In this document: positions 59,701 to 64,000 of the stretch, piece by piece
Layout: each line of letters starts with the position of its first letter
Numbering within the stretch: the stretch's first letter is position 1
Source: Vitrella brassicaformis CCMP3155
Lineage: Eukaryota > Protista > Chromerida
NCBI GenBank assembly: GCA_001179505.1
Contig: CDMY01000356.1
Location: forward strand, 186,001 to 250,000
Direction of reading: 5' to 3'
Length of the DNA: 64,000 nt
Notes under the pieces: model-generated
Database searches by the model: none
What the model was told of the DNA's origin: nothing
What the model saw: the letters and a program-made list of their open reading frames with translations, nothing else
Program-made: the position numbers and the translations under genes

Positions 59701-60512
59701 CTGCCGTGTCATCCCACCCCACCATACCTCTATTTCGCGTATTTCCGTCCTGATCTTGTCGACCAGCGCCTGGTAGTCCGAGTGTGGGCTGTGCTGCGAC
59801 TGAGAGGAAGGCGAGCACGACTGGAGGGACGCCGCATGGGGGAAGGGTGTGGGGGGAGGCGTCAGCGGGCCCAGCGGAGACGACAGCAGTGCTGCCATAC
59901 CATCCGTCTGCCGTGATGGAGGCTCCTCGGGCTCCTCCTCAGGCAGATCCCTCAGCTCGGACGGCATGTCCTGGTCAAAGACGCCCGGCTGTCTTTCCCT
60001 GACCCAGTCCACCTGGCCCTTGTAAAAGGTCGCCAGCCGCTTGGCGTTCCTCAGCTTGACGCGAGTCTTGTGAAGCTCGGTCTTGACGAGCAGCGTCTGC
60101 GATTTGGAGAGTTGCTGGAACTCGTTGAGCTTGCGCATGGCGGTGAGCTCGGCCTGCCGTGCGGTCTCCATGGCCTGTCTGCAGTCGGTGTTTTCGCTCT
60201 GCAGGGCTGCGATGGACGCCTCCAGCCGGTCTCTCTCCCCCTGCCACTCGTCGCTCTCGAACGCAGGGCTCGATGATGCGATCTCTGACAAACCCAGCTC
60301 CTCCAGCATGTCCAACCTGACAACAACACACACAACACAACACAACACAACACAACACAACACATTCCTCGTTTGTGGTGTGTACATACATGTGGCGCAT
60401 GCGCACGAGATTGTGTTGACCTCTTTGCGGTTTGTGCAGCCAGAGAAGGGTCATATGATTTCGGCGTATGGAACACCCGGCCGCCACGCCTCGAGTCAGG
60501 GCGGCTATCCAT
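56756..60512 (-). CDS. Kinesin-14 (C-terminal motor, KIFC3-like)
   Basis: An N-terminal coiled coil is followed by the neck [23 protein letters not shown]. Motor motifs: [72 protein letters not shown]. Confidence 0.94.
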
Positions 60513-60772
60513 CACCCGCGACCACGGCTTCCAAGGTAAGCAAGTACCCTATCTCTGGACAATCATGTCCCTATTTGGAGGGAGGAGCCGCAGCTGGATG
60601 CCCTGCAGGCAGGTGCATTCGGCGTACTGTACCTCAGTCAGGATATCCAATTTGGCGCACAGATCTGATAAGCCAGGCCTTGGACGAGCTCATCACAACC
60701 ACACATCGTCCTCCTTTGGGCAATGTAAATACATTGCTCCGTGAAACGCTTTTGTCCACTAAAAAAGCCCAG

Positions 60773-61681
60773 ATGATGGAGTGCCAGAGCTTTCTCGAGT
60801 ATGGCACCTGCTCGAACGGCTACTGTGAGGAGCTGCACGCAACGCCAAGCCCCGTCGTCCCACACGGCAAGACCATCATCGCAGCAGGTCGACACGGCAC
60901 ACACTCATGAGGCGAGCGGATACATACCGCTCCTTCTCCTTCTGCGGTCATACGTACAGGCCCCGAAAGATCTGCGTCAACGTGGCTGTTTAACGCCATC
61001 CGCCTGCTGTTCGCGCACTCTAACGAACCGCTGGACGCTTATTGGATTGCAGACGTCTCGAAGGAGAAGCTGGCTGCGCGCGGGGCAGGGCACAAGAACC
61101 TGTTGATCAAGACACACGACTGGCCGCTGAGGGAGGATAATGGGGATCTGGTGCATGGTGATGGTGGGAGCAACAGGGAGACGGTCGTTATCGTTACACA
61201 CAGAGATCTGAGGGACGTGGTGGCGTCTTACCTGAGGGTCAGATGGATCTCTTCGGCACCTGATTCGATCTGTGCCCATATGGAGGCCTATGTGCGAGAC
61301 CACCTGAGGTGCGCACTTAGTCGGACTTGTTTCGTTCATCGGTGTCATCCGTGTGTCTGTGTGTTGCTGTGCAGGTGGGCATCAATCGCTTCGCTCAACA
61401 TCGGCTATGAGAGGATCATGTCTGACGAGCTTGGCGCATTAAGGGACGTGGCAGCCTGCTGTGGGCTGCCGACCGACCCGTTCGAAGCACTGGAGGCGGT
61501 GAAGAGATCCGTCAAGGCACTGCAGCCGCCCATGTATGGATCTCCCTGCCCTGTGAGCAAGCTGTGGCCGGAGCATCTGTCTGGAGAGACACAGAACAGG
61601 CGACACTTGCTGTCTGAGAGACTGAGGCAGCGGATTCATGACCAGTTTGTTGACTATCAGCGTGTGTATGGCTATGCGTGA
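60773..61681 (+). CDS. CCCH zinc finger fused to a sulfotransferase (PAPS-binding) domain; three exons
   Basis: Exon 1 is MMECQSFLEYGTCSNGYCEELH (C-x8-C-x4-C-x3-H)...KTIIAAG. Intron 60888-60959 follows, then PERSASTWLFNAIR (5'-PSB loop), LIKTHDW, and VTHRDLRDVVASY (3'-PB). After intron 61309-61374 the frame continues IGYERIM...VYGYA*. Confidence 0.8.
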
Positions 61682-63262
61682 GTGCGTGCGTGGTGGATGT
61701 GACTGACTTGTGTCCGTCGCTTTGGTTGGCCATTCACGGAAGGCGGTCACGCCGACAACGAACTGGAAGGCAGATCGTTGCTGTATGTAAATATGTGCAG
61801 TCGGGCCCTCATTCATGTATGGGAACCACACCCCCCTCCCCTGGCTGTACAGGCAACATCCAACAAGCTTCCCCCATCTATACCAGCAACCTGCCATGCG
61901 GACACAATATTTACTAGCTCCCCCCTTCAGCTCGCTGGGTGGGTGTCTTGTGTCTTTCTTGCACGTGTGGCGAAAAAGCTCCCCGCCTCCGAGTCCAAAA
62001 TGCCCCCCACTGTGTGTCGAGTGAGGGAGTGGGGCGGGAGACCCGCTTCAGCAAATCACCTACCATCCATCCATCTGTCGATCGATCCGCACACGGCCAC
62101 GCCCATGGATGCTTTGTGTGTGTGGTCTATCAATCGACGGCATGCACAGAGGGCGAAAAGGGCAGACAGGCAGTGACACCAAGCGACCCAACGCTCGTCT
62201 TTGGGAGGTGCTGGCTGTCACTCATCCGGCCTGCCTCCAACCACACACACAAACACCCGCCGTGCACAGCCAGCCATAATATTGGACAACACCGACCATG
62301 GCAACCGAAACACGAGCCACCCATCCGTCCATCACACCCATGCTGCCCCTAGTCCGGCTGGCCAGCGTTCATCAACAAGTCAACAAGTCTTGGCGCGAAA
62401 GCAAAACCGATGAGTGTTTCACATCGAGGGGCGGCTGTCTGTGTGCCAAACGTGCAGGCGGTCACATGTGCGTGTGTCTTGGTCTGATGCACAGAGGTAG
62501 CAGCGAAGTCCTTATTCTTAACAAAGCACACTGCGACCTCTACGCACCCCAACCAAGACACAGGCACGGTGCGCCAGTCGCACGAGAAACGCCTCATCTC
62601 ACTCTGTCTGTCTGTCTGTCTGTCTATCTGTCCGTGTCTGGATCGCCCCCGTGCGTCCATCCTCCTCTCGCCCATCCGCACCCCCGGCCTGACGCACAAG
62701 CTCGTCAACCACCGGGATACGAGAAAGACGACTGAAAGGAGGCACACCGAAGACAAGGCAAGGCAAAGCAAAATCCAGCCCGCAGCAAACAAACCACAGC
62801 AGCGCGTCAGGTCAATCATCAAGTAGGTGTATGTCCACCAGCCAGTCAGTCAAGTCTGTCGGTCGGTCAGATATTTGTTGGCAGGGTCGTGTTTGTCGCA
62901 GGAGACGAAAACGCAACCATTCAGTCAGTCGCTTATCAACAAGATAGCAACATCAACAACAACTCAGGTTGCCTAGTGAGTGGGTGCACGGGCCCGTCAC
63001 CCCTTCCTAGCACAGGCATGTCCAGCCGCTGATCGGCGGACACGTCTGTGTCCAGCAATCAATCACTGAATGGATGGATGGCATCAGCGAACGCATGGCA
63101 TGACGACTGCACTTCACTTCATCGGTCGGTCCGTCATTCATGCTTCAAAAATACAGCACAAAACAGTTGTGCCCTCCAGCACCGAGCGGCCCTCCGGCCC
63201 ACACACGTACACAGAGAGTAAGTGACACGCACCACAGAGTAGTGAGTCAGTCAGTGAGTGAG

Positions 63263-64000
63263 TCAGTTGGACGCCTCGCGAGTCTCGTTGTGTGCGTCGA
63301 GGACCACGGCCAGCAGGTGGAGCACCACAGCTGACGACAGCTTGAACAGGGCCTCGCACGCCAGCTCGCAGGAAACCTTGGACGCCTCCGGCAGACTCAT
63401 CGCCGTCTGGTCACGGCACCAACACACACAGAGAGATCCGTGTGCGAATCGGACCGGACACCATTGCGTGCGTGTCCTGTCTATGTGAGTCGAGTCGTCT
63501 TGCGTGGGAACGTACCTCGATGAAGGCTGTGGCCCTCTGGACGTCCGGCCGGTGCATCAGCCCCTTGATCCATGCCGCCCTCGCAGACCTCGAGCCCTCA
63601 CAGGGACACTCAGATATGGCCGTCAGACACGCAGGCGCACTCGCCCCGGCCCTTCCTCCTCTGCTCTTGCCCCGTGGGCTCGACGAGACAGCCGGCGGCG
63701 AACCAGGTGACGCGGCACTCGACACGACGTCAAGCATCGTCAGGAGGCTGACCACCACTTCCTGACGAGCCACGCTCTCAGCGAAGTCGCCATACTCTCG
63801 CAGTATGACCGTTAGCTGGTGGCGCTGGGGATGGTGCTCCATGCGGCACCTCAGGTTGGTGAGGGCGGCGCTCACGGGGGAGGGGGCACATGAGGCATGC
63901 CGGAGGTGCAGGGAGTGCTCCTCGAATGCGATGCGCTGTCGAACCACACGGTCGGCGAGGACGGGGAGTTTTTGGGCAAGCTTGGCCGCCCTCTCAAGCC
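63263..64000 (-). CDS. 3' part of a hypothetical protein (gene starts beyond the window)
   Basis: The frame is open from the window edge to a donor at ~63515 (ATAFIE|gtacgt). The last exon is TAMSLPEASKVSCELACEALFKLSSAVVLHLLAVVLDAHNETREASN*. Confidence 0.5.

What the first reader, a model, noticed from the sequence alone, without database searches (positions are those of the whole stretch)
60773..61681. CCCH zinc finger fused to a cytosolic sulfotransferase domain
Seen: the C-x8-C-x4-C-x3-H finger shares exon 1 with the sulfotransferase's first beta-strand (KTIIAAG). The phase-1 intron then completes IIAAG-PERSASTW, so the fusion is encoded by the exon structure rather than by neighbouring ORFs. 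The KTH and RDLRDVVASY motifs are intact, and there is no signal or TM. Known: CCCH fingers usually bind RNA, and sulfotransferases use PAPS and share the fold of nucleotide kinases. Inference: an RNA- or RNP-targeted sulfo-transfer (or kinase-like) enzyme, an architecture I do not recognise from characterised proteins.
Basis: partly seen in the sequence, partly recalled or inferred. Interest (0 to 1): 0.75.

Follow-up and report, generated by a model that had tools for sequence, protein, structure and literature searches.

The report
Zinc-knuckle sulfotransferase of algae
This is a real, expressed gene of the alga Vitrella brassicaformis for a small soluble sulfotransferase with a Cys3-His knuckle at its N-terminus; the pairing is conserved in many algae and uncharacterised, but the knuckle looks like a built-in part of the enzyme, not a typical RNA-binding finger.

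Summary
Exons 60773-60887, 60960-61308 and 61375-61681 (+) give 256 aa. Both GT..AG introns are skipped in transcript contigs of four public runs, and the first AUG is 60773. The product is identical to the annotated Vitrella brassicaformis protein CEM05204.1 (A0A0G4F106).

The body is a sulfotransferase. It keeps the 5'-PSB loop (with Gly-to-Ala), KTH and the 3'-PB Arg/Ser. The AlphaFold model (pLDDT 90.9) matches cytosolic SULTs and Teg12/StaL at Z 14-15.

The Cys3His motif is not chance. It is conserved about 40 residues before the PSB loop throughout a eukaryote-only clade (green and streptophyte algae, a fern, a red alga, dinoflagellates, Heterosigma, Vitrella). The bacterial sister group lacks it and sits in glycan-modification contexts.

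It is not a canonical zf-CCCH. No member reaches Pfam's threshold, spacing varies, the cores are mostly acidic, aromatics are not conserved, and it is modelled as ordered in the full-length protein. RNA targeting is therefore unsupported.

Dinoflagellate members, however, carry TFIIS domains I/II in front of the knuckle and enzyme. That is an independent hint of a link to RNA polymerase II.

Verdict: new variant of a known kind, substrate unknown. No paper on it was found. The scan holds no other note of it.

The parts
60757..60772 (+). 5' UTR. The transcript contigs begin at 60757, 60759, 60768 and 60771, and there is no ATG before 60773.
   Evidence: table 8
60773..60887 (+). Exon 1 (115 nt): start codon, Cys3His knuckle, linker, and beta-strand 1 (KTIIAA, residues 33-38 at 60869-60886).
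60782..60838 (+). Cys3His knuckle, C4-x8-C13-x4-C18-x3-H22.
   Evidence: C13 and C18 invariant, C4 in at least 90%, H22 in 31/35
60888..60959 (+). Intron 1, 72 nt, GT..AG, phase 1. Spliced in contigs of 4 runs, retained in JGI contigs L001 and L002.
60960..61308 (+). Exon 2 (349 nt): sulfotransferase core.
60962..60985 (+). 5'-phosphosulfate-binding loop, P40-E-R42-S-A44-S-T-W47. This is the clade signature GPERSGSTW, here with Gly-to-Ala at residue 44.
61109..61117 (+). K89-T-H91, equivalent to the catalytic Lys/His of SULTs (KTH).
   Evidence: K 34/36, H 36/37 in the eukaryotic clade
61199..61228 (+). 3'-phosphate-binding motif H119-R120-DLRDVVA-S128.
   Evidence: R120 34/35, S128 29/32
61309..61374 (+). 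Intron 2, 66 nt, GT..AG, in frame and free of stops. Absent from homologues and skipped in all transcripts.
61375..61681 (+). Exon 3 (307 nt) to the TGA stop: C-terminal half of the domain, ending in YGYA as in dinoflagellate and bacterial relatives.
61559..61576 (+). K217-L-W-P-E-H222, a clade-specific loop motif. It stands where the bacterial relatives have LLHxGH followed by DGRxGxW, and SULTs have RKGxxGxW.
61682..62593 (+). Sequence after the stop that is contiguous with the mRNA in transcript contigs. It is either a long 3' UTR or an overlap with the convergent neighbour's transcript; this was not resolved.
   Evidence: table 8

Best explanation
The locus is a three-exon, expressed gene of Vitrella brassicaformis. 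It encodes a 28.8-kDa soluble enzyme of the sulfotransferase fold.

The protein belongs to a eukaryote-only clade that split from small bacterial glycan-type sulfotransferases. The clade gained, once, an N-terminal Cys3-His module followed by a 16-50-residue linker into beta-strand 1.

Most likely mechanism (inferred):
- The body binds PAPS through the R42-S-A-S-T-W loop and through R120/S128.
- It transfers sulfate to a hydroxyl (or amine) acceptor using H91 as the base and R42/K89 to stabilise the transition state, as in SULTs.
- The knuckle binds one zinc ion. It is an integral cap packed on the catalytic domain, at the place of the N-terminal arm that lines the acceptor pocket in cytosolic SULTs. 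It would shape or gate the acceptor or partner site. It is not a free RNA-binding finger.

The acceptor is unknown. The lack of a signal peptide or membrane anchor places the enzyme in the cytosol or nucleus.

Shown here: gene structure, expression, identity with the annotated protein, fold, conservation of the catalytic residues and of the knuckle, and the taxonomic spread. Inferred: zinc binding, PAPS use, the position and role of the knuckle, and the compartment.
For: - Splicing and transcription start. Identity with CEM05204.1 (P0163).
- Fold: AF2 pLDDT 90.9, pTM 0.90. Foldseek E about 1e-7 to SULT2B1b and retinol dehydratase. VIA Z 14-15 to SULT7A1, Teg12, SULT1C2 and StaL over model residues 31-256; several rows run 15-256 against SULT residues 20-22 onward, so residues 15-30 overlay the SULT N-terminal arm.
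- Family profile against PDB: SULTs at E 1e-5 to 5e-4 over almost the full length.
- Catalytic residues in the eukaryotic clade: R42 38/39, S45 and T46 39/39, K89 34/36, H91 36/37, R120 34/35, S128 29/32.
- Knuckle conservation. It is present in 73 of 90 distinct clade members that have at least 45 residues before the loop; most of the rest are variant motifs or poor gene models.
- Tree: the eukaryotic clade separates from the bacterial one with SH-aLRT 100.
- Knuckle ordered in the full-length model (pLDDT 81-88), but pLDDT 43-51 when a dinoflagellate knuckle is modelled without the enzyme domain (that alignment was shallow).
- Acidic cores without conserved aromatics. No TM segment.
- Bacterial relatives lie in, or are fused to, glycan-modification genes.
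Against: - No biochemical data exist for any member.
- P0163 itself is below Pfam's sulfotransferase cut-off (24.9 against 27 bits).
- The PSB loop has Ala where nearly all relatives have Gly.
- The C-terminal 3'-phosphate loop (RKGxxGxW in SULTs, DGRxGxW in the bacterial relatives) is not recognisable in the eukaryotic clade. PAPS binding could therefore be altered.
- I could not read model coordinates. The contact between knuckle and core, and the zinc geometry, are inferred from pLDDT and aligned ranges only.
- The TFIIS fusions in dinoflagellates fit a partner-recruiting or nuclear role better than a plain small-molecule enzyme.
Confidence: 0.55

Rival explanations
1. The knuckle is a nucleic-acid- or RNP-recognition element. 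The enzyme sulfates (or otherwise modifies) RNA, a nucleotide, or a protein of the transcription/RNA-processing machinery, in the nucleus.
For: - The Cys3His pattern has MBNL-like C-x7/8-C-x4-C-x3-H spacing in the Vitrella branch.
- The only Pfam and PDB hits of the knuckle, though non-significant, are CCCH fingers: zf-CCCH E 0.0045, and MBNL1 ZnF E about 5 as the only two hits among 177,635 PDB sequences.
- In dinoflagellates of at least four named genera (Prorocentrum, Crypthecodinium, Effrenium, Symbiodinium) the same knuckle plus enzyme follows TFIIS domain I and/or II. Pfam scores for TFIIS_M are above the gathering cut-off: 57.6, 43.9, 40.0 and 36.8 against 29.2 bits.
- P0020 is a single ORF on mRNA-sized contigs.
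- The 16 best structural matches of the modelled N-terminal part are all TFIIS domain II, Bye1 TLD or PHF3 TLD, mostly from Pol II complexes.
- The protein is soluble and small enough to enter the nucleus.
Against: - The Vitrella protein itself has no TFIIS domain and no second finger.
- Every zf-CCCH score in the family is below Pfam's threshold.
- The knuckle cores are acidic and lack conserved aromatic or basic residues. In known CCCH-RNA complexes (TIS11d, MBNL1) such residues make the RNA contacts; this rests on established knowledge and was not tested here.
- Other branches fuse the same enzyme to a histidine phosphatase or a ShK domain, so partners differ by lineage.
- Sulfation of RNA or of Pol II components is not a known reaction.
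Confidence: 0.2
2. The Cys cluster is a redox switch rather than a structural zinc site. Reversible disulfide formation would regulate the enzyme, as is known for other enzymes of sulfur activation in plastid-bearing organisms.
For: - Three conserved Cys lie close together in sequence.
- The clade is found mainly in photosynthetic lineages.
- A sub-branch replaces the His with Phe while keeping the Cys residues and adding a further upstream Cys.
Against: - The His is kept in 31 of 35 sequences and the ligand order is that of Cys3His zinc sites.
- The short helix after the first Cys in the model (residues 5-10) is what CCCH fingers show (established knowledge).
- An odd number of Cys fits metal ligation with His better than it fits disulfide pairs.
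Confidence: 0.1
3. The protein is a catalytically weakened pseudo-enzyme or a PAP/PAPS-binding sensor. It would keep the fold for ligand binding or as a scaffold.
For: - Gly-to-Ala in the PSB loop of the Vitrella protein and a few relatives (RTASTW/RSASTW).
- Loss of the recognisable C-terminal GxxGxW loop in the whole eukaryotic clade.
- Sub-threshold Pfam score.
Against: - The residues that carry out catalysis in SULTs (Arg/Lys of the PSB loop, KTH, and the Arg and Ser of the 3'-PB motif) are nearly invariant across the clade. That is not expected after loss of activity.
- The replacement loop KLWPxH is itself conserved.
Confidence: 0.1
4. The CCCH string is a chance pattern, or the annotated start is wrong and the finger is not part of the protein.
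For: - The bare pattern is expected 0.6 times per six-frame translation of this window.
- Two JGI contigs retain intron 1. That form would end the knuckle ORF after 45 residues.
Against: - Spliced contigs from 4 runs start 2-16 nt upstream of the ATG at 60773 and there is no earlier ATG.
- The neighbouring gene's transcript ends at 60736, on the other strand.
- The motif is conserved in 73 of 90 relatives at the same distance from the PSB loop.
Confidence: 0.02

Closest known systems
Cytosolic sulfotransferases (SULT1/SULT2 families, insect retinol dehydratase; Pfam Sulfotransfer_1)
   Same: - Same fold: VIA Z 14-15, rmsd 3.1-3.8 A over 200-210 residues.
- Same motif order: PSB loop, KTH, then the 3'-PB Arg and Ser.
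- Soluble.
- An N-terminal segment precedes beta-strand 1 at the equivalent place.
   Different: - Only 11-17% identity.
- About 40 residues shorter.
- Arg instead of Lys in the PSB loop.
- No RKGxxGxW loop and no KTVE dimerisation motif.
- The N-terminal arm is replaced by a Cys3His knuckle.
- Closest by sequence to bacterial proteins, not to animal or plant SULTs.
Small bacterial sulfotransferases of about 200-240 aa (Sulfotransfer_1/3 hits; e.g. the Phenylobacterium sp. hypothetical protein P0006) and glycopeptide sulfotransferases Teg12/StaL
   Same: - Sister group in the tree, at 27-38% identity.
- Shared motifs RSGSTWLFN, KxH, HRDLRDVxAS and the C-terminal GY.
- Teg12 and StaL are among the best structural matches.
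   Different: - The bacterial proteins start directly at beta-strand 1 and have no knuckle.
- They keep the DGRxGxW loop.
- They lie in glycosyltransferase/methyltransferase clusters or are fused to FkbM methyltransferase or polysaccharide pyruvyl transferase.
CCCH (C3H1) zinc fingers, especially the MBNL-type C-x7-C-x4-C-x3-H
   Same: - Same ligand order, and in the Vitrella branch the same spacing class.
- A Gly before the second Cys.
- A short helix after the first Cys in the model.
- MBNL1 fingers are the only PDB hits of the knuckle profile.
   Different: - Below every Pfam CCCH threshold, and the PDB hit is not significant (E about 5).
- A single copy rather than a tandem pair.
- Acidic, with no conserved aromatics.
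- In other branches the C1-C2 spacing shrinks to 2-4 and the C2-C3 spacing to 3.
- One branch has Phe in place of the His.
TFIIS-like-domain proteins without the zinc ribbon (yeast Bye1, human PHF3/DIDO)
   Same: Only for the dinoflagellate relatives. A TFIIS domain II, sometimes with domain I, is followed by a different effector module in place of TFIIS domain III.
   Different: - The Vitrella protein has no such domain.
- In Bye1 and PHF3 the partners are PHD and SPOC domains, not an enzyme.
- A sulfotransferase in this position has not been described in the literature searched.

Membership tests
PAPS-dependent sulfotransferase superfamily (Pfam Sulfotransfer_1 / Sulfotransfer_3) | 5'-phosphosulfate-binding loop (P-K/R-S/T-G-T/S-T-W) after beta-strand 1 | tested here: met
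   G39-P-E-R42-S-A-S-T-W47. Arg, Ser, Thr and Trp are conserved in 38-39 of 39 clade members. The Vitrella protein has Ala where most have Gly.
PAPS-dependent sulfotransferase superfamily (Pfam Sulfotransfer_1 / Sulfotransfer_3) | Catalytic His, with a Lys two residues before it (KTH) | tested here: met
   K89-T-H91. It aligns with the KTH of retinol dehydratase in the profile-to-PDB alignment. K is kept in 34/36 and H in 36/37.
PAPS-dependent sulfotransferase superfamily (Pfam Sulfotransfer_1 / Sulfotransfer_3) | 3'-phosphate-binding Arg and Ser (R-x7-S) | tested here: met
   R120 and S128 in HRDLRDVVAS. They are kept in 34/35 and 29/32.
PAPS-dependent sulfotransferase superfamily (Pfam Sulfotransfer_1 / Sulfotransfer_3) | C-terminal 3'-phosphate loop (RKGxxGxW / GxxGxxK) | tested here: not met
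   No RKG or GxxGxxK in P0163. The bacterial DGRxGxW is replaced in the eukaryotic clade by KLWPxH followed by a variable stretch. Other residues may do the job; this was not tested.
PAPS-dependent sulfotransferase superfamily (Pfam Sulfotransfer_1 / Sulfotransfer_3) | Score above Pfam's gathering cut-off | tested here: inconclusive
   P0163 scores 24.9 bits on Sulfotransfer_3 against a cut-off of 27. Its relative P0015 passes both models (27.8 against 27; 25.5 against 22). Nine of the ten members of alignment A1 match at E up to 5e-9.
PAPS-dependent sulfotransferase superfamily (Pfam Sulfotransfer_1 / Sulfotransfer_3) | Sulfotransferase fold | tested here: met
   AF2 pLDDT 90.9. Foldseek probability 1.00 with E about 1e-7. 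VIA Z 14-15 over 200-210 residues.
PAPS-dependent sulfotransferase superfamily (Pfam Sulfotransfer_1 / Sulfotransfer_3) | PAPS binding and sulfate transfer | not testable with these tools
   This needs recombinant protein.
Animal/plant cytosolic SULT family in the strict sense | KTVE (KxxxTVxxxE) dimerisation motif, and closest kinship to SULT1/2 or plant SOT | tested here: not met
   No such motif in P0163. The nearest relatives outside the clade are bacterial. Identity to SULTs is 11-17%.
zf-CCCH (PF00642 and related Pfam CCCH models) | Cys3His ligands with C-x7-8-C-x4-5-C-x3-H spacing | tested here: met
   C4-x8-C13-x4-C18-x3-H22 in the window. Across the clade the spacing ranges down to C-x2-4-C-x3-C-x3-H.
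zf-CCCH (PF00642 and related Pfam CCCH models) | HMM score above the gathering cut-off | tested here: not met
   17.3 bits for exon 1 alone and 13.2 bits for the whole protein, against 20.5. No CCCH model passes in nine relatives.
zf-CCCH (PF00642 and related Pfam CCCH models) | Conserved aromatic and basic residues used for RNA contact | tested here: not met
   Core net charge is negative in 26 of 35 sequences (mean -1.5). About half of the cores (17 of 35) have no aromatic residue. That these residues define RNA-binding CCCH fingers rests on established knowledge of TIS11d and MBNL1.
zf-CCCH (PF00642 and related Pfam CCCH models) | Zinc binding; RNA binding | not testable with these tools
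   This needs metal analysis and binding assays.
TFIIS-like domain proteins | TFIIS_M (domain II) present | tested here: not met
   There is none in P0163. The upstream in-frame ORF is not part of the transcript. The domain is present in the dinoflagellate relatives P0020, P0021, P0032 and P0170.

The most novel reading that the evidence does not exclude
The knuckle-sulfotransferase clade is a nuclear enzyme family that acts on the transcribing RNA polymerase II complex, on nascent RNA or on chromatin.

In dinoflagellates it would be delivered there by TFIIS domains I/II that have lost the zinc ribbon. In Vitrella and green algae the knuckle would itself be the docking or substrate-recognition element.

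This would be the first sulfotransferase tied to the transcription machinery. A variant of the idea is that such an enzyme produces PAP, a known inhibitor of XRN exoribonucleases, locally at the polymerase.
Probability: 0.15. Interest if true: 0.85.

Novelty: new variant of a known kind. Interest (0 to 1): 0.55.

Why it matters
Sulfotransferases are known as Golgi enzymes for glycans and proteins, or as cytosolic enzymes for small molecules. Here a soluble branch carries a conserved metal-knuckle module and is spread across most algal lineages. None of its members has been studied.

The work defines that clade and gives its signature: a knuckle ending C-E-x-L/R-H, then a linker, then GPERSGSTW. 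It also shows that the clade has been wired to very different partners in different lineages: TFIIS polymerase-binding domains, histidine phosphatases and a ShK domain.

If the knuckle proves to set the acceptor or partner specificity, it would be a new way of targeting sulfation. If the TFIIS link reflects function, it would open the question of sulfation in transcription.

For genome annotation, it replaces 'unnamed protein product' with a testable description.

Tried and rejected
- Upstream in-frame ORF (60083-60910) as a longer N-terminus: rejected. Transcripts start at 60757-60771, and the sequence upstream belongs to a minus-strand neighbour whose contig ends at 60736 and has a CT..AC intron.
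- Intron 2 as coding read-through (it is in frame and stop-free): rejected by the spliced contigs and by its absence from all homologues.
- Direct phmmer of the domain against PDB: only noise, an archaeal tyrosine phosphatase at E 0.67. A family profile was needed.
- The first word-based search found only bacterial relatives and a fragment. The exhaustive search was needed to find the eukaryotic clade.
- phmmer of the dinoflagellate TFIIS-like part against PDB gave nothing. Pfam and the fold search did.
- A dinoflagellate spliced-leader search on the fetched contigs found nothing.
- Five literature searches found no paper on a CCCH- or TFIIS-sulfotransferase.
- The exons were searched by reference. 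The full-length protein was used only as the database entry P0163 returned, and each exon translation was checked as a substring of it.
- Left undone: a Pfam control on the other chance Cys/His strings of the window.
- Model coordinates could not be read, so the Cys/His geometry and the interface between knuckle and core were not measured.
Full report
**1. What is in the sequence**

- Exon 1 (60773-60887) encodes MME, then C-x8-C-x4-C-x3-H (60782-60838), a short Pro-rich linker, and KTIIAA plus the first base of a Gly codon.
- A 72-nt GT..AG intron (60888-60959) joins this to PERSASTW.
- A second GT..AG intron (61309-61374, 66 nt) is in frame and free of stops, so a purely mechanical ORF reads through it.
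- The coding sequence is 771 nt, giving 256 residues.

**2. Is the gene model real?**

Contigs from four public runs (three studies) skip exactly these two introns. They begin at 60757, 60759, 60768 and 60771, and no ATG lies between 60757 and 60773.

The sequence upstream, although open in the same frame, belongs to a neighbour on the other strand. That neighbour's transcript contig ends at 60736 and carries a CT..AC intron. The two genes are therefore divergent, with starts about 20 nt apart.

Two JGI transcript contigs (L001, L002) are 100% identical to the window over their longer aligned blocks. They splice intron 2 but retain intron 1. A prokaryotic gene caller split them into a 45-residue knuckle peptide and a 154-residue fragment.

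The 90% cluster of that fragment also holds a 256-residue protein, CEM05204.1 / UniProt A0A0G4F106, 'unnamed protein product' of Vitrella brassicaformis CCMP3155. Each exon translation is an exact substring of it. The organism is thus a chromerid alga, and the model is already annotated.

All full-length analyses used this database entry (P0163).

**3. The enzyme body**

Pfam is only borderline on the Vitrella protein: Sulfotransfer_3 scores 24.9 bits against a cut-off of 27. The rest of the evidence is clear.
- Relatives found by search carry Sulfotransfer_1/3.
- A profile of the family matches solved cytosolic sulfotransferases over nearly its full length, at E 1e-5 to 5e-4.
- An AlphaFold2 model built on 124 relatives has mean pLDDT 90.9 and pTM 0.90.
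- That model matches SULT2B1b, retinol dehydratase, SULT7A1, SULT1C2 and the glycopeptide sulfotransferases Teg12 and StaL, with Foldseek E about 1e-7 and VIA Z 14-15.

The residues that define the reaction are present and nearly invariant in the clade:
- the 5'-PSB loop R42-S-A-S-T-W;
- K89-T-H91;
- R120 and S128 of the 3'-PB motif.

Two departures are worth recording.
- The Vitrella protein has Ala where most relatives have the loop Gly.
- The whole eukaryotic clade lacks a recognisable RKGxxGxW/DGRxGxW loop. It has a conserved KLWPxH instead.

There is no hydrophobic segment.

**4. The knuckle**

The bare Cys/His string is not rare in this GC-rich DNA: 0.6 are expected per six-frame translation and two were seen, one of them in a CA-repeat. 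Pfam's zf-CCCH model gives only 17.3 bits against a cut-off of 20.5. On these grounds alone it could be chance.

The exhaustive protein search settles this. Of 167 relatives, the closest 40 or so (36-56% identity) almost all have an N-terminal extension with the same motif about 40 residues before the PSB loop.
- In 35 aligned modules, C13 and C18 are invariant, C4 is present in at least 90%, and H22 in 31 of 35.
- Among 90 distinct clade members with enough N-terminal sequence, 73 carry the motif. Most of the others have a variant (C-x4-C-E-H-C-H) or look like faulty gene models.

The motif comes in three forms:
- C-x5-8-C-x4-C-E-x-L-H in Vitrella, green and streptophyte algae, and a fern;
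- D-C-x3-4-C-H-x-E-C-E-x-R-H-L-D in dinoflagellates, a red alga and others;
- a form with Phe in place of His and an extra upstream Cys.

**5. Who has it**

Named sources:
- Streptophytes: Chlorokybus, Spirogloea, Closterium, the fern Adiantum.
- Chlorophytes: Trebouxia, Myrmecia, Apatococcus, Coccomyxa, Chromochloris.
- Red alga: Purpureofilum.
- Raphidophyte: Heterosigma.
- Dinoflagellates: Prorocentrum/Polarella, Crypthecodinium, Polykrikos, Symbiodinium, Effrenium, Durusdinium.

A tree of the catalytic domain splits these cleanly (SH-aLRT 100) from 64 bacterial-type proteins that start directly at beta-strand 1. The knuckle is therefore a shared derived feature of a eukaryotic clade.

The bacterial side is tied to glycan modification.
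- One member sits among glycosyltransferases, methyltransferases and GDP-sugar enzymes.
- Others are fused to an FkbM methyltransferase or a polysaccharide pyruvyl transferase.

**6. Is the knuckle an RNA-binding finger?**

For:
- The ligand order and the MBNL-like spacing.
- The only PDB sequences the knuckle profile touches are MBNL1 fingers, although at E about 5.

Against:
- No family member reaches any Pfam CCCH threshold.
- There is a single copy.
- The spacing is not conserved.
- The cores are net acidic in 26 of 35 sequences.
- About half of the cores have no aromatic residue. Known RNA-binding CCCH fingers rely on conserved aromatic and basic side chains (established knowledge of TIS11d and MBNL1).
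- In the full-length model the first 30 residues are ordered (pLDDT 81-88, with a short helix at 5-10). Several structural alignments extend to model residue 14-15 and overlay the N-terminal arm of SULT1A1/2A1/2B1. In those enzymes that arm lines the acceptor pocket (established knowledge).
- A dinoflagellate knuckle modelled without the enzyme domain is predicted poorly (pLDDT 43-51). That alignment was shallow, so this point is weak.

The most economical reading is a zinc-stabilised cap that is part of the enzyme.

**7. An unexpected lead**

Dinoflagellate members are longer. P0020, P0021, P0032 and P0170 carry the TFIIS central domain at 36.8-57.6 bits against a cut-off of 29.2. P0016 carries the TFIIS N-terminal (Med26-type) domain.

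The fusion is a single ORF on mRNA-sized contigs from three runs. It also occurs in a Crypthecodinium transcriptome and in genome annotations.

A model of the N-terminal part is confident over the helical domain. Its 16 best PDB matches are all TFIIS domain II, Bye1 TLD or PHF3 TLD, mostly from RNA polymerase II complexes. In these proteins the knuckle and sulfotransferase stand where TFIIS has its zinc ribbon.

This is independent evidence that, at least in dinoflagellates, the enzyme is brought to the polymerase.

It cannot simply be carried over to Vitrella. The Vitrella protein has no such domain. Other branches fuse the enzyme to a C-terminal histidine phosphatase (E 1e-12 to 6e-18) or to an N-terminal ShK domain.

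**8. Verdict**

The fusion is real, conserved and uncharacterised, and five literature searches found nothing on it. The RNA-targeting inference is not supported by the properties of the knuckle.
- I rate the best explanation at 0.55: an active, soluble PAPS-dependent sulfotransferase whose Cys3His knuckle is an integral, probably zinc-binding cap that shapes the acceptor or partner site.
- A nuclear or transcription-linked role is rated at about 0.2.
- The finding is a new variant of a known kind and is of moderate interest. The TFIIS fusions are its most surprising part.

Noticed in passing
Relatives P0016, P0020, P0021, P0032, P0170 (loci L004-L006 for P0020): Dinoflagellate members of the clade have TFIIS domain I and/or II in front of the knuckle and sulfotransferase. 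The enzyme stands where TFIIS has its zinc ribbon. No such architecture turned up in the literature searched.
   Followed up: partly
Relatives P0195, P0198, P0208, P0214 (also P0200, P0202, P0211, P0212, P0217): A sub-branch with the loop TASRDMGRTASTW carries a C-terminal histidine phosphatase (His_Phos_1) domain. It may remove a phosphate from the PAP by-product or from the substrate. P0190 instead has an N-terminal ShK domain.
   Followed up: partly
L001 1-548 and L002 1-545 (window 60768-61315): Two JGI transcriptome contigs retain intron 1 while splicing intron 2. This form would give a 45-residue knuckle-only peptide (P0164) and leave the enzyme without its first strand. Its abundance is unknown because only contigs were available.
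   Followed up: partly
window 60736-60757, and 60317-60420: The upstream neighbour is on the minus strand and its transcript contig ends at 60736. That is about 20 nt from the first contig start of this gene, so the pair is a tight divergent one. The neighbour's intron holds an (ACACA)n repeat (60320-60371) at which read-based contigs break.
   Followed up: no
window 61682-62593 and 62641-64000: Transcript contigs run about 900 nt past the stop codon up to a repeat at 62594-62640. Beyond it lies a transcribed region with a 109-nt CT..AC intron (63407-63515), which marks a convergent minus-strand gene. The JGI contigs join the two, so the 3' ends may overlap.
   Followed up: no
L007 (TARA metagenome scaffold, 5585 nt) and L008: The nearest relatives of the Vitrella protein (P0012, P0011) come from AT-rich DNA (28% and 34.5% GC). 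On L007 the gene is one of four closely spaced same-strand ORFs without Pfam hits. That layout would suit a large virus or a compact protist genome.
   Followed up: no
window 60083-60910 (+): A 275-codon stop-free frame runs into exon 1 from upstream. It could mislead gene finders into a longer N-terminus, but transcripts do not cover it on this strand.
   Followed up: yes
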